Origin: Phallusia mammillata
Lineage: Eukaryota
Assembly: GCA_965637545.1 (NCBI GenBank)
Contig: OZ281501.1
Location: 15,128,001 to 15,192,000 of the forward strand
Length of the DNA: 64,000 nt
Direction: 5' to 3'
Made by a program: the position numbers and the translations under genes. Shown piece by piece: positions 4,866-55,699 of this stretch (position 1 is the first letter of the stretch; each line of letters begins with the position of its first letter). The notes under the pieces were generated by a model that searched no databases, was not told the origin of the DNA, and worked only from the letters and a program-made list of their open reading frames with translations.

Positions 4866-5079
4866 ATGTCGGGTTGGTCTTGTACCGGCAAACGGTGGCT
4901 GCTCTCTTGCGCTGGTTGTGTGCACTCAAACGCACTGAATCGTGACGAACGTAATGTGAATAACGTCATCAACATAAACAACAATCAGGAAAAGCAAACC
5001 CCTTTGATTGTCCCAAAGTTCGTCGAAGAGAAGAAATTGCCTAACGAGGAATTGTTGATTATACCTGATATCGCTGAGG
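4866..5079 (+). CDS. MYLK: MYLK-like coding exon 1, Cys-rich leader MSGWSCTGKRWLLSCAGC...IPDIAE
   Basis: ATG in AAAATG context, 71 codons, GAG G|GTGAGA phase-1 donor matching the phase-1 acceptor at 15321; no recognised domain, so linkage is inferred. Confidence 0.6.
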
Positions 5080-5651: not shown

Positions 5652-5780
5652 TGACGTCATCTTCAATATTACGTCATCGAAGCAGTCTTTTACGCGGACG
5701 ATATTTTGCCATACTTTATTATCTCAAAGTCTGCCTGATTTTACGGAAACGTTATTATGACGTCATGAAACAAAACGTCA
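5652..5780. promoter_or_regulatory. CRE cluster in intron 1
   Basis: TGACGTCA at 5652 and 5758, TTACGTCA at 5669, ACGTCA at 5775. Confidence 0.35.
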
Positions 5781-15472: not shown

Positions 15473-18400
15473 GTATGTTAAAAAAATCGACTGTAACATT
15501 GCAAGTATGTTAAGATTACCTTAATGGTATGCATGTCGAAACATATAAATGAAAGGAGTACGATTAGTTTTTTTTTGTGTCTCAATTTTCAGTTATTTAC
15601 AAATCGGTTATTTGCTTTTACTTTAAAACTACATTTCCAGCTTTACTAAACTTACATTTCTCAAAGTGAGTGTAAAAAGTTAAGTATAGCAAAGGAAAAA
15701 TAAAGTCTAGATTGAACTGAAATCCACCCACAGTAGAAGTTTTCCCGGTGATTACTGTTTTCTACATCAATATAATTCAAAAAATAGAATCTATTTGAAT
15801 AAGGAACTGAAGATGCCAAAACTTTTTGGTGAAATATATATCTCGTGAAACTATGGTGTTCAACGGTTGATTCTGTTTGGCCTAGAGTTTCATACACTGG
15901 GTTTTGAATTATAGCAAAGGGTGACGGTTTTGAGCTAACGTTTTGTACAGCATCTAGGAAAGGGCGATGTAGGTAAAGATCGTCAGTCGTCACACATAAA
16001 CCTATTTGAATTGTCTACCATTTAACGTAAGTACAGTGTTGGGTTGGCAATTTTAAGTAATGTTAACCAAATAAGTGTTACATTTTGCATCAAAGAATTT
16101 TTACCGCGCTTTGATACCCGCGTAGTTTTTTCTGCTATTATCCATCGCGACATGGGTGGTCCACTTTAGATGAAAACCATGCTATAATTCGGTCATTCAA
16201 CACCGCTAATGCACGCTCCAATAGCTTTTAAGAGTCCAGAGAGATTTCAAATTGGATTTGTTACAAGTATTTGACACATACTATCTTTACCATTGTGATG
16301 TTTTACTGAAAAGAACATGTTAGCTGCAATGTCTCTTCAATTAGAATTGAAGAATTACATAAGACAAACTATATGGACCTAATTTCAAACCTTTACGTGC
16401 TATGTGCGCATAAAGCCCCTGTCGTCAATTATCTAATCATTTGTAAAACGAAACCTGCCCACAGACCTGCACTCAGCCAGTCGATTGCCAAGCGACTTCA
16501 GTTTCAAAGCCCTTGTTTACGTAAGGTGTGGGGGTTTCCCGACAATGCTTTTGTGCTGCGGTGTCCGTTTTCGTGATGCTGATCCCACAGATTAGAATTA
16601 GATGCCTCGACCTTTTCAATGCACTTACCCATAACCGTGTAACAACGACCTGAAATTTTGCTTTCACTTCTTGTTTTTGTTAAGACAAAATTGTTGATGG
16701 CCTTTTTATGAATAAGTTTCTTCTTAACTGGGCAAATGTCTTGGTTTGTGATGTAAAATATGAAAGAGGAACCTTTTATCTTTGCAGACCGAAAAACACT
16801 GTTTTCTTATTATCCATTTATTTAACGACAAAATGTCATTTGTTTTATTTGTTTTGTTGAATATGCAAATAGTTTTGTCATAAAACATATTATCACTTGG
16901 TAAAACAAAAATACACATATATTTAAAAAATATTTGACTGATTTAACCCGTCGTTTTTCGGTTTATTAGTGATTGTTATAAGTAGTTGTTATTATGAAGT
17001 ACACCCCAGGCTGTGAAAACGGCGAAAGAAACACCATTAGTGGTATACTACGGTATACTACCGTTTTTGTCTAAAGTACTATTTATTATTTGTGTATCAG
17101 TACGAGAAAAAGTTCTCTGATTAGTATCAATACTTTATCTCTGCTGAACTTTTGTCGTCTGTTGATGATGCATCACGATGACGTCACAAGTGGTTTGATG
17201 TTTATGCTCAATTGGGTCCATAAGATAGATTCATTTGTCGTAATCCCCTCGCACCGCTGGGTGTAAACTGAACCTCGAAATTGCCCCCGCAACCTATTTA
17301 CCTTTCCGCCAACATTTTCACAACACAATGGAACGATTGTTTTTCTTATACTGACGTCACCCAAACCAGGGAATCTGATGTAAACAAGGGATGACCTCTT
17401 AGACGTTGATGAATTGACGTTATAGGTTAAAAATAGTTTTCATTTGCTTCTGGATGAGTTTAGAACAGTTTACGTCGTTTGTCAGTGATTTAATCATACA
17501 TTTACCACTTTATTTACGTGTAGTTATTGTAGTGATTGAACAGTTTGTGTGCTAAAATGAAAGCTCTAAACCTAAAACGTGTTGCTGTTATTGTTTCTTT
17601 ATTCGCGGGCACTAACAGGTGATTACCACCAAATTTGAAACTCGGCTGGTTTAGGACACAAACTTCGGCCGCTGTTTGGCGCTAGAGCACCTTGTTTCCA
17701 GATTTTGACTCCTGAATATTTGTTAGCGAATACTGGATGTCCTTTTGGTGTGCATAGATATCTAGTCAAAGGGTAATTTGACTATTAAATAACTTTTTTG
17801 TCAATTAATGATTCGTATGTATACTTTTGCGGCACCAAATATTCTTTAAAATGAAAGTAAAAATTGTCAACATTGAAAGTGTGTATGACAAGCTGTGAAA
17901 AAAATTGTAAATGAACACTTTCGTACAATACGTCTACGGAAAATGTTTTAAACTCCTTCTCGAAGTTAGCTTCACATAAATGACTGCAAAACAGCTTTTT
18001 TACGGTTTTGCAACACCTGCTAAGTATCGCTCTTATTATCTGGTGCTCCAGTCCTATGCGCAACCAAGCGTGCAGTGAAAGTGCGCCCTGATTGGTTAAG
18101 CTGCGTCTCGTGACCTTTTCGTGCTGGAAAATTGACGAGGCTTTCACCTTTTGGCCGGCGCTCGTCGCGTGCTTGACATTTTTTGGCCGCTTTTTTGACT
18201 AACTTGCGATGCATGAGCTGCGTTTTCGTCTCGGGATTAAGGAAACTGTAGCTGCCATCAGAGCGACGGGTCTGAGAGATTGCACCTTATCTCGGGCACC
18301 GCTGGCAAAATGGGCATTGGACATGCACTGAAAATATGTTAAGTCGGGGTTTTATGCAGCGTTTCGCTTTTTTGCCGACGGTTGTATGCTGACAAATTCC

Positions 18401-45124: not shown

Positions 45125-45242
45125 GGTGACAAGGTACAATTGGTGATAAATCCTGTTACGTCATCGCACAGTGGTCACGTGAAATGTACAATCCAGAATT
45201 CAGCGGGTACTGCATCCCATGAGGCGAGGATATATGTCCGTT
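45125..45242 (+). CDS. MYLK: Exon 15, Ig7 C-half (GDKVQLVINPVTSSHSGHVKCTIQNSAG)
   Basis: gctcag| acceptor, T|gtaagt donor. Confidence 0.92.
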
Positions 45243-45526
45243 GTAAGTAAAGTGTAACAATGTTAAAGTTAAGCCATATGTAAAAACAAAACAATGCGAG
45301 GTAATATTAACATGCGAACACAATCTTATTTGTCGCTTTTATTTGCTAGTATCAGTATTAGTGGAATCGACAACCTTGGTCAAAAACTTTGGCCATGTAT
45401 ATCAGGCAATACAATAACTTTTTTTCTTTATTACGGGATTCAAACCCAGGACGCTCCCGGGGACGAATCCCGATCAAGGTTTTTAATGTCGATATGTGAG
45501 TCCAATAACTTAGTTGTATTTTTCAG

Positions 45527-45700
45527 CAAAACGAGTGGCACCATCTTTTGACACTGATCTTCCATCAACTATCGAAGTCCAAGAAGGAGCTGAAGCATCG
45601 TTTGAATGTCGGGTCACAGGTCATCCGCAGCCACGCGTGACCTGGACACGTGACGGACGGTCGCTGAGTATTCTGACAACAGAAACAACATACGAAGATG
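45527..45700 (+). CDS. MYLK: Exon 16, Ig8 N-part
   Basis: tttcag| acceptor, G|gtaata donor; APSFDTDL...FECRVTGHPQPRVTWTRDG. Confidence 0.93.
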
Positions 45701-49286: not shown

Positions 49287-49484
49287 GAAAACCATCTCCA
49301 GTTGCTCGTTGGTTCTTTGATGGCGAGGAAAAAGAAAACAATGAGGACTTTCGGATCGTTTCATCTGGTGATGACAGGACCTTGATATTTACCGAAGTCT
49401 TCCCAGAAGATTCTGGAACCTACAGCTGTGTTATCAGCAACAGTGCCGGTGAAGCTACGTCCAAATGTAAAATCACCGTGGAAG
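49287..49484 (+). CDS. MYLK: Exon 23, Ig11 C-part (EVFPEDSGTYSCVISNSAGE)
   Basis: ttttag| acceptor, G|gttcgt donor. Confidence 0.93.
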
Positions 49485-49904
49485 GTTCGTTTTTTTTTCG
49501 TGTTTTTTTGTACAAGCTGTGATATTTCAATTATTAATTGTGCTCATTTTGGACTAAATTCCCTTCCATGCCTTGCGTAATAGTGCATTTTATGCAGATA
49601 TTAAAGAACTTGTTTGCTATGACTTGTTTCGCATAGAACGTTTTCGATTGATAATAAACTTGTGTTTTTAGTAAATTACTTTTTTGGTACCAACTAATTT
49701 TAGGTGGGCTCTTTACACATTTATCTTTTTGCAATTGCGGTCGAACACAAAGATGATTGCGCAATAGGCGTTGTACACTTTTATTTCAACGTTTGTGTTA
49801 ACATTAATTAATGTAACACTCTAAAAAGCCATTGAGTTTACAAAAACATTTCCCCAAACATAACAAGCATTATGAAGAAAAAAGTTTTTGTTTTATTTTC
49901 ACAG

Positions 49905-50031
49905 AGATTGATGGCGAAGCACCGTCATTCATTATGAAACCAAAACCAGTGAATGTGAATGGTGGAGAGAAGGCTATTTTCAGCTGTCGTGTGGACGGTG
50001 ACCCATCACCATCAGTTCAATGGCTATTCTG
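49905..50031 (+). CDS. MYLK: Exon 24, Ig12 N-part (APSFIMKPKPV...CRVDGDPSPSVQW)
   Basis: tcacag| acceptor, TG|gttagc donor. Confidence 0.92.
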
Positions 50032-50214
50032 GTTAGCAAATTTCACCATTGTATTTGTTAACTTGTGTTAAAGTTCATACATAATTTATGAATACAACCA
50101 TTTTCTAGTTGCTTGTGTTGATGTATTTCTGAAATCAAAATTGCGTGGGCCAAATGTATGTCTGTTTTTATATGTCTAACCATTTTATTTTCATTTTTTA
50201 AATTTAACCTTTAG

Positions 50215-50343
50215 CAACCGTCCAATCCAAGATCTTGACCGCATCCATATATCCGAAGCCAACCAATCAAATAATTACACGCATTCGTTGGAAATTCCAA
50301 TTGTGTCGCCTCAGGACGCTGGGAGATATTCTGCTTGTTGCAG
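50215..50343 (+). CDS. MYLK: Exon 25, Ig12 middle (NRPIQDLDRIHI...PQDAGRYSACC)
   Basis: ctttag| acceptor, AG|gtatgt donor. Confidence 0.9.
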
Positions 50344-50655
50344 GTATGTGCTTGAACATGTCAAGTTTTGGATTAAATTTTTGATTGTTCCCATGATATT
50401 AATACTGCTACCAGTTTGTATATACATGTGGAGACCCATTCGTTTCTGCTTCAAAAACTAATTAGGTCATTAAATGCCAGAAACGAGGTTAAGACCCAAA
50501 TTTAACCAACAAATATAAAGTTTGAATTTTGTCAACAGAATATACTGTTTAGAAATTGGCGAAACCCTTTTCTTGCAGTGTATTTATATTTTAAAATGCA
50601 ACTCTGGGCATTTTCAACTCAACTGTTCATTAACCTTAACAATACTGAATCACAG

Positions 50656-50794
50656 GAACCTGCTTGGTGACGTCACATGCACAGTTTCGCTGATCGTGAG
50701 CGACGCCAAGCGACAGGATGCCTGTACAGATTTTCGGGGTGTTCTGAAGAAAACAAAATCACCAACGTCACCCAAAGCGACTTCGGAGGAGCAG
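50656..50794 (+). CDS. MYLK: Exon 26, end of Ig12 and first DFRxxL repeat (DFRGVL)
   Basis: tcacag| acceptor, weak CAG|gttcga donor; EEQ|VDFRSVL junction resembles vertebrate QQVDFRSVL. Confidence 0.88.
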
Positions 50795-51790
50795 GTTCGA
50801 TAACCGACCTTTGTTAAAACCCAAATGTTTGAATTTGTCTCCAGTTTTATACTAATTTAAAGATACACATAGAAAAAAAGAATATATGCCAGTTTGAATT
50901 TTTAATGTCATCCTTGTTCTAAAATGCCCTTTTACATCCGTGGGTAGGTTTGGTTGAACTTTTGACATATTCGTTGGGCATTGAGTTACATTTTCAGCGT
51001 TTGAATAAGGATTTAGAGCAGTCAGTGTTCAATGTATTTCTTTATAGGTTAATACAACTATAGGTCACAATGCAGCTAATTTTGAATGCTAGTGTAAATA
51101 GAGCGTGCAATGCGTCAGCCAACGAAGTAGATATAAAATACAGAAACCCAGTTTCCCTAATAGAAAGATCGTAAACAATGGCTTAATACACACGTTTTAG
51201 TTTATGATGATGCTATAGCATCTAAGCCCAAGAACAGAGATTGTGATACATTACAATGCGGAAACATCTTACTGCTGCAAAACTGCGCTTTCTCACTTCG
51301 CTGTGCCTTGTTACGTCACAAACGTGCTCTTCGCGATGTTGGAAATATGCCGGAAGTGTGTAAAGCAGTCTGAATGGGCTAGAAGGCGTTGAAAGAGGTG
51401 GTAGTTAGGTTAAGTGAATCAGTGGTATTAATAGCATAGACGCAAACGAGTTATTCATTAGTATTGGAGGGATAACAGCACCTTGTAGACTTAGGTACAC
51501 CTTACAGTTAGGTATAGTATGCTTCAAAGTTCTACGAAATATAATAAAATGATTGTTGGGTGTGTTGTTTGTTTGGGAAAAGAACAGTCAGTGAAAGCCT
51601 GTGAAGATTGATAATAACATTTCATACAAATGTTTGTTTCCATCCAGATAACAAGGTTTTATTGATAATACAGTCTACATTAAAAGGTTTTTTTTCAATT
51701 TGTGGTTTCAATTTGTGCATTACAAAAGTGTCTACATAAGTAGAAACCATGTCACAGTCAGCACCAGGCTAGTACCATCAGCTACACAAA

Positions 51791-51922
51791 ATGTGGAAAG
51801 ACTTAGTGAATTGCATTCCGTTTTGTGACGGCGAGGAGAGATGGATCTTCAGCTGTGTAGCTTGTTGTTATGTCGTCTTCAAGCTTTTAAAGCGTCGCAA
51901 GGAAAGGAAGCAAGACGACCCG
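51791..51922 (+). CDS. Candidate alternative first exon, MWKDLVNCIPFCDGEERWIFSCVACCYVVFKLLKRRKERKQDDP
   Basis: AAAATG start, 44 codons ending at CCG|gtattg phase-0 donor, in frame with exon 27; GC-richer than surrounding intron; hydrophobic Cys-rich stretch then polybasic patch. Confidence 0.55.
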
Positions 51923-52104
51923 GTATTGCAGATTAGATTGTGTAAAATGATTAGTAAAGTATATAGTAACCGAAAAATATTAAGTTTTGTTAAATCGGTC
52001 ATTTATTCGAATAGAATCTCATCAATTTGACAATACTATATTATTAGATTAAAGAATTAATTTATCTGATATGCTGGTGTTATAGAATCTTTTTGTCTTC
52101 TCAG

Positions 52105-52190
52105 GTTGACTTCCGTTCTGTGTTGAGGAGCACTTCAGCCGACCGAGACTTGGGAAGAAGGGGTGATTCGACCGGATCCGAAAACTCGGG
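52105..52190 (+). CDS. MYLK: Exon 27, DFRSVL repeat
   Basis: tctcag| acceptor, GG|gtaagc donor. Confidence 0.9.
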
Positions 52191-52390
52191 GTAAGCAATA
52201 ATATCGACACATGCGTAATATGCCATTTAAACAAAAAGTAGTGCTCACGAAAAAATAGAATCTGACTGCCTGACAGTTGGATATGTGTAACTACCACCGA
52301 TTTGCGAGATTCTTGGTGCTGCAATAAAGTGATGTACCCCCATACTTCGACTGTATACTTAATCGCACCTATTACTGCTAATAAATTTCT

Positions 52391-52417
52391 TTTGGAACAC
52401 TACATACGGATCTGTTC
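52391..52417 (-). mobile_element. Terminal fragment of the same repeat family
   Basis: TTTGGAACACTACATACGGATCTGTTC identical to 57715-57741. Confidence 0.65.
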
Positions 52418-52556
52418 TTAAATTGCTTTTGTTTTTGATGAACACCTTGGTTTTGAATATATATGTAGGCTACGTATATTAATATCAACTTGGTGTATTT
52501 TGTTTCTAATTGTGCTAAATCATAAGATGGGAACCGTTTTATTTCCGTATGCGCAG

Positions 52557-52687
52557 CGAGGACCCTGGAATGATCTACAAGGAAGCTTTAACTACTACCG
52601 TGAAAACGAAAGCTCTCACTGAAGAGGAAAGAAAACGTATGAAAGCGGAACAGAAAGATTTCAGATCGAATCTTGTTCGTACTGTTG
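52557..52687 (+). CDS. MYLK: Exon 28, TVKTKALTEEERKRMKAEQKDFRSNL repeat
   Basis: gcgcag| acceptor, G|gtaagt donor; hallmark MLCK actin-binding repeat. Confidence 0.93.
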
Positions 52688-53134
52688 GTAAGTTTAATGT
52701 CTAAAAGTTTTCATAGATAGAAAACAAAAATTTCTAAACGGTTTCTTCTAAACTTGAATCACATTAATAAGAGTGTAGAGTTGTTTAATAAACAAAAGTA
52801 AACGTAGTTTCGTTTTACTTTTTAACAAATCTACGTATTTGAACAAAAACCAGTTAACATACTTGCTTCTATAAATTTAAATTTCATCCATCATTAGCTT
52901 GTGCTGCTTTGTTTTTAACTAACACATTCCCGCCGATAAAAACTGTGCTATGCAGTGTAAAGTTAAAATGTTTACGTTTTCTTGAAATACTTTTTAGCAG
53001 CTTGCAATTTCAGTAACTTAACAATACAGAACAACAGCTACTTACGATACTTTGTCTTTTTCATCTTTTCATTTAACAGGCTTAATAACCTTAACACCAT
53101 AAAAAAACCTTTTCCACTTTTCACTCACCTTTAG

Positions 53135-53346
53135 TAAATCCTGAACACGCAGAGACGAAAACCGATGTAAAAAGTCGAGGACCGGAACAAAAAGACTTCC
53201 GGGACGAAGCGTTGAAGACTAAAGTGCAGACCAAGGCATTGGGTCAAGAAGATTACAAAATCATGCACGGAGAACAAAAGGACTTTAGATCAGAAACTAT
53301 CAAAAGCAAAGTTGTCACTAAGTCGTACAACGAGGATTTGGTGAAG
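53135..53346 (+). CDS. MYLK: Exon 29, two variant repeats (EQKDFRDEAL, EQKDFRSETI)
   Basis: ctttag| acceptor, AAG|gtataa donor. Confidence 0.92.
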
Positions 53347-53693
53347 GTATAAGAAAATATGACTTTTAGTTGAAGCAATTGTTTGTGTAGTGGTTTGCTG
53401 TACTTTGTATGTGTAAATAACGTGCACCACTATTGGTACTGTTTACAAATGTAAACAGTGTGGAGTATGTGGGAGAATTTTGGTTTAATTTCTACTCAAA
53501 ACTTAAGGGAAAATCTTTAAAGAGTTTAAAAAAGCCTTTTATTTCTGCTTAAGTAGGCGTTATTAAGGTGTCGTTTCGTGTATGCTGGAATAGTTTAATC
53601 CCATTTTTTTCCTTATTCTCATGTGCTAAAAATAGAAGTTTTTGCAGTTAAAATGACACAAACATTAGTGAACACTGTTTCTTATATCTGTAG

Positions 53694-53984
53694 GCAAAAC
53701 GCGCCGAACAAAAGGATTTCCGGAACGTTCTTTCTCCGACTAAACGCGAAGGGGATGAGGATAAGCATAAAGATACGGAGCATGGAGGTACATTGAAACT
53801 AGCGGAACTGCCGAAAGCAAAATGGAAGAAGGGATCAACCATGGACCACAACACAGTAGCAACAAAACGTTCACGTCGTCGGGAAGTTGTCCCTGAGAGG
53901 AAGATCCAGCAAAATGGCGATGAACAGGACGAGGAACCAGTTGGAACTAAACCTCAGTTTGTTCAACCTTTGGCTGATATGGAG
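53694..53984 (+). CDS. MYLK: Exon 30, EQKDFRNVL repeat, charged linker, start of Ig13
   Basis: ctgtag| acceptor, GAG|gtaaga donor; ends GTKPQFVQPLADME. Confidence 0.92.
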
Positions 53985-54546
53985 GTAAGATATAATGGTC
54001 TTCTTGTCTGAAGGTGCATTTTTGGAATAAGTTAAAAATCGAAAGCTAACAGCCTGGCTATACTAGCCTTTACGGCTATTGTCTGGTCACCAGCAGCACT
54101 AATTAGACCATGTATGCCAAAACGTTGTATACTGTCTTCTCCCATTTAGTTAAGTTGTGCCGAACTGTTCACAGTAAAATAGGAACCAAAAATTAGTCGA
54201 GAAATCGTCCTTTACCGCCCTGTACCTAATACTAGAATTAAATTTTTATTCTTATGGGAAAACCCAACAAATAAGTTTACGCAAAGCAATCCAGATAATA
54301 TATCACCGTGCCACAACTTGTATGATCAAAACAATAGTTGATGTTAATTGTGAAATAAAACAAAATAAATATAATATCCGCTCGGACAAAGTAACAACCG
54401 AATCCAGATTAGGCTATAAAAATACAAGTGGAAAAATTCTCTGTGATTGTGATTCGTCCGCGACGTACAACACAAAATCAATTATTTCATGTTATGGTTA
54501 TCCGAACATGTTCTTTTAACAAATTGTTGTGCATTTTTTTTCACAG

Positions 54547-54670
54547 AACAAAGACGGTGAACCGTTCGAGCTTGTTTGTCACGTGACTGGAGAGCCAAGG
54601 CCCGAGATCACGTGGTTTCTTGAGGATGAAGAAGTAAAGGCCGAAGCCGATATTGCTATCACATACGAAG
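54547..54670 (+). CDS. MYLK: Exon 31, Ig13 middle (ELVCHVTGEPRPEITWFL)
   Basis: tcacag| acceptor, G|gtaaat donor. Confidence 0.93.
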
Positions 54671-55168
54671 GTAAATACAAGGCTTAAAATGGAAAATGCT
54701 TTCTGGTTAATGTTATTGTTCAACTAGGAAGTCAAACTTTTTTGTGTGTGCTAATAACCGCGTTTCCTTGTAACGGTTGCAATTGTTGATGTTTGACGTT
54801 GTTAGGGACTTTGTCTGACTTTGTGATTTCCTTAAAAAAAGCACATTTTGTTTTCCATTTTAATTTTTTTCCTGTATTTACGAATTTCACCCCCCTTGGT
54901 CAAGATAGAGTAATTCAAAATTCTTCAAGTTTTCGCTATTGTTGGTTATTATACATTTTGATCCCTGTTGAAGCCTAAAAATCGTTTTAGCAATGATCGT
55001 TTCTAAGCCAAAATTTAGGCACAAAGATTGACCATTTTATTAATATGTTTGTTGCATTCCACAGAGATTGTCAAAACCAATTTAATAAATCATATTCAAG
55101 CCGCTATAAAGATGTCTATCACATTTTTACATGAAAACTGTGATTTTTATGAAACTTTGCTTTTTCAG

Positions 55169-55291
55169 GGGATGTGTGCCGACTGTCTGTGACGGAGAGC
55201 TTTCCAGAGGACCAGGGTAGATACAGTTGCACAGCCCGGAACGACCACGGGCAGGTCACGTGCTCGTGTTACGTCACAGTGCTTACTGAGG
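55169..55291 (+). CDS. MYLK: Exon 32, Ig13 C-part (DVCRLSVTESFPEDQGRYSCTARNDHG); last MYLK exon found
   Basis: tttcag| acceptor, strong G|gtgagt phase-1 donor; read-through would give GESA-stop at 55303-55305. Confidence 0.93.
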
Positions 55292-55699
55292 GTGAGTCGG
55301 CGTGATCTCTAGCGCCGCTGCGTGGAGCCCCTGCCGTAGCGAGACAAGAAAAAATTCGAAACAAAAAACTCTGACCAGATTTGCGGCGCGTGCGTAAGAC
55401 AGAACAGACACCTTTTCACTCCCCCCTGCTTGCACCCCCAAACCACCCCCGAAATGCTTTTACCCTTTTTACCATTCATATATTATTCTACTTCTTATTA
55501 TTATTATTTGTATTGTTATCCGAAGGCCGACTAATTCTGTAGCTGCACCCGAAGTACCATTTGCGTTGCCAGCCGATTAACTGTGTATGAAAACGTGCAG
55601 GTGTTATTGCCGCAATTGAAACTTTCTATGCGTAGCTTCACTCCCCCAAAAAACCTTACGAAAAGCACCCTAATACTACCGCTCACGAAACCGTTGTAA

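What the first reader, a model, noticed from the sequence alone, without database searches (positions are those of the whole stretch)
51791..51922. Candidate short-MLCK first exon encoding a membrane anchor, placed just before the actin-binding repeats
Seen: 44-codon ATG-initiated segment ending at a phase-0 GT donor and in frame with VDFRSVL of exon 27; peptide has WIFSCVACCYVVFKLL (hydrophobic, 3 Cys) immediately followed by KRRKERK. Established: vertebrate smooth-muscle (short) MLCK starts from an internal promoter within the DFRxxL region and is soluble/actin-bound; hydrophobic-Cys-basic segments typify signal anchors or palmitoylated anchors. Inference: a membrane-tethered short MLCK isoform at the position analogous to the vertebrate internal start.
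Basis: partly seen in the sequence, partly recalled or inferred. Interest (0 to 1): 0.75.

Follow-up and report, generated by a model that had tools for sequence, protein, structure and literature searches.

The report
Possible extra start exon in sea-squirt MLCK
An intron of the sea squirt Phallusia mammillata's myosin light chain kinase gene holds a short open reading frame that looks like a diverged second copy of the gene's normal protein start, so it may begin a shorter kinase, but no RNA yet shows it spliced in.

Summary
An ATG at 51791 opens 44 codons that end at CCG|GTATTG and are in frame with the VDFRSVL exon at 52105.

The window is the Phallusia mammillata MLCK gene. The ORF sits in the 1310-nt intron between two RNA-confirmed exons.

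ORF plus in-frame donor is not unusual: 32% of shuffled introns give the same. In four RNA contig sets the main transcript (depth about 300) joins 50794 to 52105 directly. No 51922 to 52105 joint was seen.

New evidence: residues 12-26 (CDGEERWIFSCVACC) match the conserved extreme N-terminus of ascidian long MLCK (GKRWLL[SA]C in Phallusia, Ciona and Clavelina). None of 50,000 composition-preserving shuffles reach the score, and it is the only hit besides exon 1 in all six frames of the window.

I read it as a diverged paralogue of coding exon 1, probably a rarely or tissue-specifically used alternative first exon (about 0.5).

A transmembrane anchor is not supported, because the apolar run is only 13-16 residues. 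Cysteine acylation is plausible but untested.

It is absent from the 450-nt orthologous intron of Clavelina and from all annotated ascidian isoforms.

The parts
51791..51922 (+). Candidate alternative first coding exon: 44 codons, ATG in an AAAATGT context, GC 0.46 against 0.24-0.38 in the flanks
51824..51868 (+). Residues 12-26, CDGEERWIFSCVACC, which match the conserved N-terminal motif of ascidian long MLCK
51923..51928 (+). Putative phase-0 donor GTATTG with G at -1. It is weak but comparable to RNA-proven donors of this gene (GTTCGT, GTTAGC, GTTCGA)
51770..51772 (+). In-frame upstream stop (TAG), so 51791 is the first ATG of the ORF. Read as an acceptor for a cassette exon, it lacks a pyrimidine tract
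50656..50794 (+). Constitutive exon A (end of an Ig domain plus the first DFRGVL). It joins directly to 52105 in the main mRNA
52105..52190 (+). Constitutive exon B (VDFRSVL...), the proposed splice target
4866..5079 (+). Coding exon 1 of the long isoform (MSGWSCTGKRWLLSCAGC...), the proposed paralogue of the candidate
51311..51357 (+). CRE-like TTACGTCA (51311) and ETS-type CCGGAAGT (51350) in a local GC/CpG peak about 450 nt upstream of the ATG. This is a weak promoter hint only

Best explanation
The ORF at 51791-51922 is a diverged paralogue of the first coding exon of the Phallusia mammillata MLCK gene. It most likely serves as an alternative first exon driven from inside the exon A/exon B intron. 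Spliced at 51922 to 52105, it would give a kinase of about 1055 aa that lacks the N-terminal Ig array. That kinase would keep five of the six DFRxxL actin-binding motifs and carry its own version of the Cys/Trp N-terminal module (G-x-R-W-hydrophobic-hydrophobic-S-C-x-x-C), followed by a hydrophobic and then a basic stretch. Shown: the ORF, the frame, the donor-like site and the homology to the conserved N-terminus. Inferred: transcription start, splicing, translation and any membrane association. If there is membrane association, Cys acylation plus the basic patch is more likely than a transmembrane helix. Use must be rare or tissue-restricted, because the dominant mRNA skips it.
For: BLASTP of the 44 aa against residues 1-110 of the long isoform gives E=3e-4. 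The N-terminus is conserved in Phallusia, Ciona X1 and Clavelina X2. M, G, R, W and C are invariant across all four sequences. A profile built from Ciona and Clavelina alone, run against all 2916 six-frame ORFs of the window, finds exon 1 (E=1.4e-10), then this ORF (E=0.0044), then nothing better than E=0.7. Simulated 64-kb windows reach that score in 2 to 4 of 150 cases. None of 50,000 shuffles of the peptide's own residues reach it. Three motif regexes hit only these two places in the window. There is no DNA-level similarity, and by eye the shared Arg and Ser use different codons, so the likeness is at the protein level. The ATG contexts match (AAAATGT in both). The donor has G at -1, like all 9 proven donors. 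GC drops from 0.46 to 0.24-0.32 right after 51922. A low-depth RNA contig spans 51772-51924 and ends at the last base shared by the unspliced form (GTA..) and the spliced form (GTT..). That end point is suggestive only.
Against: No 51922->52105 joint appears in four runs; the depth-300 contig joins 50794->52105 in all of them. RNA over the ORF has depth 3-4, the same as pieces in other intronic stretches (51120-51388, 52213-52366), so it may be pre-mRNA. Twelve further RNA-like runs hold only the constitutive exons (share 0.17). Clavelina's orthologous intron is about 450 nt and has no similar ORF. No annotated isoform in Ciona, Clavelina or Phallusia starts here. The codon-usage score (0.021 per codon) lies below all 23 real exon windows and is matched by 9 of 95 null ORFs. 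The ORF, donor and frame alone are expected in 32% of shuffled introns. The comparison with exon 1 was made after the fact.
Confidence: 0.5

Rival explanations
1. Relic duplicate. The segment descends from a copy of coding exon 1 but is no longer, or never was, used as an exon. The RNA over it is pre-mRNA.
For: The homology evidence is the same. No junction was seen, and RNA depth equals the intronic background. The segment is absent from Clavelina and from all annotated isoforms. The codon score is below real exons.
Against: No DNA-level similarity remains and shared residues use different codons. A neutral relic that old should have lost its ATG, its open frame, the motif and the in-frame donor. 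All four are intact.
Confidence: 0.2
2. Chance ORF in an intron. The resemblance to exon 1 is coincidental and favoured by a Cys-rich, hydrophobic composition.
For: 32% of shuffled introns give such an ORF with an in-frame GT. Hydrophobic 16-mers occur in 5-10% of random ORFs. Simulated windows reach the profile score in 1.3-2.7% of cases. There is no junction and no conservation in Clavelina.
Against: None of 50,000 composition-preserving shuffles of this pre-specified peptide reach the score. The match sits near the N-terminus in both sequences, on the gene's strand, in an ATG-initiated ORF. The exon-like GC step coincides with the ORF limits.
Confidence: 0.15
3. In-frame cassette exon 51773-51922 (150 nt, 50 codons) occasionally inserted between exons A and B.
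For: The 150 nt are open in the frame shared by exon A (phase-0 end) and exon B. The low-depth contig spans 51772-51924, almost exactly from AG to GT.
Against: The would-be acceptor (cacagtcagcaccaggctag|) has no pyrimidine tract, unlike all 9 proven acceptors. No 50794->51773 joint was seen. The homology is to an N-terminal, Met-proximal module.
Confidence: 0.04

Closest known systems
Vertebrate MYLK nested promoters (long/non-muscle MLCK, short/smooth-muscle MLCK, telokin)
   Same: One gene yields a long and a shorter kinase. The short form begins inside the run of DXRXXL/DFRXXL actin-binding motifs that spans the junction (PMC2185581). Here the candidate start lies between DFR motifs 1 and 2 of six.
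   Different: To my knowledge (not tested here), vertebrate short MLCK has no unique hydrophobic, Cys-rich N-terminal peptide. No transcript start or splice junction is shown here. No ascidian has an annotated short isoform at this position.
Conserved N-terminus of ascidian long MLCK (Phallusia A0A6F9DL23/CAB3264137, Ciona XP_018668913 isoform X1, Clavelina XP_076821518 isoform X2)
   Same: It shares the M...G-x-R-W-hydrophobic-hydrophobic-S/A-C-x-x-C module within about 25 residues of the initiator Met.
   Different: In the candidate, Lys becomes Glu before Arg-Trp, there is one extra residue, LL becomes IF, the lead-in is longer (residue 12 rather than 6-9), and a hydrophobic-then-basic tail replaces a polar Asn-rich sequence. 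Exon 1 ends in phase 1 and the candidate in phase 0.
N-terminal S-acylation (palmitoylation) membrane-targeting motifs such as GAP-43 or PSD-95 (own knowledge)
   Same: Clustered Cys residues lie next to hydrophobic and basic residues near an N-terminus.
   Different: No acylation data exist. The motif is not a recognised consensus. The function of the homologous long-isoform motif is unknown.

Membership tests
Alternative first exon from an internal promoter (MYLK short-isoform type) | A splice junction from the exon's donor to the shared downstream exon in RNA | tested here: not met
   four runs show only 50794->52105 and no 51922->52105 joint. Contigs drop rare forms, so this is not proof of absence.
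Alternative first exon from an internal promoter (MYLK short-isoform type) | A transcription start upstream of the exon, inside the intron | not testable with these tools
   Only assembled contigs were available, and these cannot show starts. CRE-like and ETS motifs at 51311-51357 are only hints.
Alternative first exon from an internal promoter (MYLK short-isoform type) | An ATG-initiated ORF in frame with the downstream exon through a usable donor | tested here: met
   This alone is expected by chance in 32% of shuffles.
Alternative first exon from an internal promoter (MYLK short-isoform type) | Conservation of the exon in related species | tested here: not met
   Clavelina intron (L002 about 45160-45608, 450 nt) has no similar ORF. 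Clavelina is distant (about 63% aa identity), and no closer genome was reachable.
Ascidian long-MLCK N-terminal module (GKRWLL[SA]C) | A match to the conserved residues near the initiator Met | tested here: met
   M, G, R, W and C are invariant in the four-way alignment. Profile E=0.0044 window-wide. 0 of 50,000 shuffles reach the score.
Signal anchor / single-pass transmembrane helix | An apolar stretch of about 19 or more residues | tested here: not met
   The best 19-residue Kyte-Doolittle mean is 1.12, below the usual 1.6. The uncharged run W18-F30 is 13 residues, or 16 counting K31-L33.
S-acylated N-terminal membrane anchor | Cys residues flanked by hydrophobic and basic residues, with demonstrated acylation | not testable with these tools
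   The sequence feature is present (C22, C25, C26, then KRRKERK). Acylation needs an experiment.

The most novel reading that the evidence does not exclude
Ascidian MLCK carries a conserved, undescribed Cys/Trp N-terminal targeting module. In Phallusia this module has been duplicated onto an internal promoter inside the DFRxxL region. The result would be a short MLCK that is tethered to membranes by acylation plus a basic patch. This would be a convergent or ancestral counterpart of the vertebrate long/short MLCK arrangement, with a membrane-localised kinase no one has reported.
Probability: 0.2. Interest if true: 0.6.

Novelty: new variant of a known kind. Interest (0 to 1): 0.45.

Why it matters
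If the exon is used, a tunicate MLCK gene makes a short kinase from inside the actin-binding repeat region, as vertebrate MYLK does. That bears on whether the long/short arrangement predates vertebrates or arose twice. The conserved GKRWLL[SA]C start of ascidian long MLCK, and its second copy here, also point to an unstudied N-terminal targeting module. If the exon is not used, this is a clear case of a decayed or silent exon duplicate that a sequence-only reader will flag.

Tried and rejected
- **Word-indexed protein search, 79-aa ORF:** no hit. The length filter limited candidates to 43-138 aa.
- **Word-indexed protein search, neighbouring Ig exon:** no candidates, so exon-level ORF calls of ascidian genomes are not in that database.
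- **Exhaustive representative search with an Ig exon:** swamped by titin-like giants ranked on summed domain scores. It was rescued by local tblastn of the 150 hits against the window, which picked out P0080 and P0078 and led to Ciona, Clavelina and Phallusia proteins.
- **Genomic loci:** Ciona (P0080, P0202) and Phallusia (P0152) are not on record. P0078 is an intron-less transcript contig.
- **Rfam on the intron:** nothing.
- **Repeats and DNA similarity:** the intron is not repeated elsewhere in the window and has no DNA similarity to the exon 1 region.
- **Pfam on the peptide and on long-isoform N-termini:** only Ig domains, and nothing for the motif.
- **Codon-usage test:** a small training set made the ORF look exon-like. 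A larger set made it equivocal, so I give it little weight.
- **Enrichment of RNA pieces over the ORF:** rejected as evidence, because the runs were chosen for holding words of that very stretch.
- **Spliced-leader acceptor at 51772:** considered, but a literature search for the Phallusia SL sequence gave nothing usable.
- **Earlier-findings look-ups by words and by sequence:** blank.

Full report
**What is there**

The window reads exactly as described.
- An ATG at 51791 opens 44 codons, MWKDLVNCIPFCDGEERWIFSCVACCYVVFKLLKRRKERKQDDP, ending at 51922.
- These are followed by GTATTG. An in-frame TAG lies at 51770-51772.
- The ORF continues another 35 codons into AT-rich sequence.
- The next exon begins at 52105 with VDFRSVL in phase 0.

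**Gene and organism**

An exhaustive search seeded with a neighbouring Ig exon returned mostly titin-like giants. Local tblastn of those hits against the window singled out two orthologues. A region search with one of them then found named ascidian MLCKs.
- P0152 is Phallusia mammillata 'myosin light chain kinase, smooth muscle' (A0A6F9DL23 / CAB3264137, 2630 aa). It matches the window's exons at 97-100% identity from 4866 to 55290, so the window is that gene.
- Ciona intestinalis and Clavelina lepadiformis orthologues are about 60-63% identical.

**Exon map and RNA**

Sixteen RNA-like runs from four studies hold the constitutive exons of the query stretch. Four runs from one study hold more. 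I laid three of those plus one other on 49400-55300 (5901 letters, within the operators' limit).
- In every run one contig of depth 20-330 joins 50794 to 52105, and likewise all neighbouring exons. The ORF therefore lies inside a 1310-nt intron that the dominant mRNA removes.
- No contig joins 51922 to 52105.
- Low-depth (3-4) colinear pieces lie at 51772-51924 (X1), 51688-51854 (X3), 51120-51388 (X2) and 52213-52366 (X2, in the next intron).
- That is about 1% of exon depth, which is what pre-mRNA would give.
- The runs were ranked by how many words of this stretch they hold, so their coverage of the ORF cannot count as enrichment.
- One detail is worth recording. The X1 contig stops at 51924. 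That is the last base shared by the unspliced sequence (CCGGTA...) and the predicted spliced sequence (CCGGTT...), where a de Bruijn graph would branch if both forms were present. A fragment end or a polymorphism would give the same result, so this is suggestive only.
- Contigs cannot show rare junctions, starts or strand.

**Is the ORF more than chance?**

- 32% of dinucleotide-shuffled copies of the intron hold an ATG followed by at least 44 open codons ending at an in-frame GT.
- Hydrophobic 16-mers of this strength occur in 5-10% of random ORFs of at least 44 aa in the window.
- The adjacent basic cluster makes the combination unique among 569 ORFs, but that is a post-hoc criterion.
- The donor is weak, yet the gene's proven donors are loose (GTTCGT, GTTAGC, GTTCGA, GTATAA). 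All nine have G at -1, as does the candidate.
- A codon-usage log-odds trained on 1638 codons of this gene places the ORF in the top tenth of null ORFs but below every real exon window. A smaller training set had looked more favourable. I treat this test as equivocal.
- GC content is 0.46 in the ORF, 0.27-0.38 just upstream and 0.24-0.32 just downstream. The step coincides with the proposed exon end.

**The new evidence**

The long isoform begins MSGWSCTGKRWLLSCAGC. This start is conserved in Ciona isoform X1 (MSGSRGKRWLLACTAC) and Clavelina isoform X2 (MSKWNCAGKRWLLSC). Residues 12-26 of the candidate read CDGEERWIFSCVACC.

| Test | Result |
|---|---|
| BLASTP, 44 aa vs residues 1-110 of the long isoform | E=3e-4 |
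| Four-way alignment | M, G, R, W and C invariant |
| Profile from Ciona and Clavelina only vs all 2916 six-frame ORFs of the window | true exon 1 E=1.4e-10; candidate E=0.0044; next best E=0.7 |
| Markov-simulated 64-kb windows reaching the candidate's score | 2 to 4 of 150 |
| Shuffles of the candidate's own residues reaching it | 0 of 50,000 |
| Three loose regexes for the motif | hit only these two places in the window |

Allowing for the comparison being noticed after the fact, chance is still unlikely.
- The two exon regions share no DNA similarity. By eye, the shared Arg and Ser use unrelated codons. The likeness is therefore at the protein level and old.
- That is hard to reconcile with a neutral relic, which should have lost its ATG, frame, motif and donor.

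**What speaks against use**

- Clavelina's orthologous intron (L002 about 45160-45608) is only about 450 nt and holds no similar ORF. The motif occurs there only at the X2 first exon.
- None of the annotated isoforms starts before exon B. These are Ciona X1-X3, Clavelina X1-X5 and the single Phallusia entry.
- The search range (994-3162 aa) would have included a short form of about 1055 aa.
- Every ascidian transcript in hand reads straight from ...EQ into [VLMI]DFR.
- No closer genome (another Phallusia, Ascidia or Ascidiella) was reachable with the tools.

**Mechanism**

I consider a diverged paralogue of coding exon 1 that acts as a rarely or tissue-specifically used alternative first exon the most likely reading (about 0.5).
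- It would give a kinase lacking the N-terminal Ig array but keeping five of the six DFRxxL motifs (motif list).
- The transmembrane-anchor idea is not supported. The best 19-residue hydropathy mean is 1.12 and the uncharged run is 13 residues. The homologous long-isoform motif has no hydrophobic helix at all.
- Clustered Cys next to hydrophobic and basic residues is compatible with S-acylation, but that is inference.
- A cassette-exon reading (51773-51922, 150 nt, open in frame) is disfavoured by an acceptor with no pyrimidine tract.
- An ETS-type CCGGAAGT and a CRE-like TTACGTCA sit in a GC/CpG peak about 450 nt upstream. This is a weak promoter hint. CRE-like octamers are over-represented across the whole window.

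**Comparison with what is known**

- In vertebrates, one MYLK locus gives long MLCK, short MLCK and telokin. The DXRXXL motifs span the junction between the N-terminal extension and the short form (PMC2185581). The position here is analogous.
- The differences are a unique Cys-rich N-terminal peptide, no demonstrated transcript, and no counterpart in two other ascidian genera.
- I found no report of a membrane-anchored MLCK or of this ascidian N-terminal motif in the searches run. Those searches were narrow.

**Verdict**

- The finding is worth a targeted RNA test.
- Interest is moderate. If real, it is a new variant of the known MLCK alternative-promoter theme, with a duplicated N-terminal module.

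Noticed in passing
window 4866-5079; P0202 and P0203 N-termini: The extreme N-terminus of ascidian long MLCK (MSG/K-W-x-C-x-GKRWLL[SA]C) is conserved across Phallusia, Ciona and Clavelina. It has no Pfam family. Its function appears undescribed.
   Followed up: partly
window, whole; e.g. 5652-5765, 17179-17359: CRE-type octamers (TKACGTCA) occur 25 times against 4.8 expected, including three within 115 nt in intron 1 just downstream of exon 1. Several others lie inside Ig exons, where they encode Asp-Val-Thr.
   Followed up: no
L002 59349-61235 (Clavelina lepadiformis OX392446.1): In Clavelina a 5227-aa multi-Ig gene begins only 114 nt after the end of the MLCK gene on the same strand.
   Followed up: no
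P0080 residues about 790-810; P0154 residues about 770-800: The old Ciona intestinalis (UniParc) and Ciona savignyi (H2YHI4) gene models replace the VDFR exon B with unrelated residues, unlike the RefSeq Ciona isoforms. These are probably mis-predicted exons in the older annotations.
   Followed up: no
P0201 and P0204 N-termini: Ciona X3 and Clavelina X4 share another alternative N-terminus (M..GWP.[DE]PVFWT.P...DGKVV). Several alternative first exons of this gene are therefore conserved between genera, which shows that promoter multiplicity is normal here.
   Followed up: no
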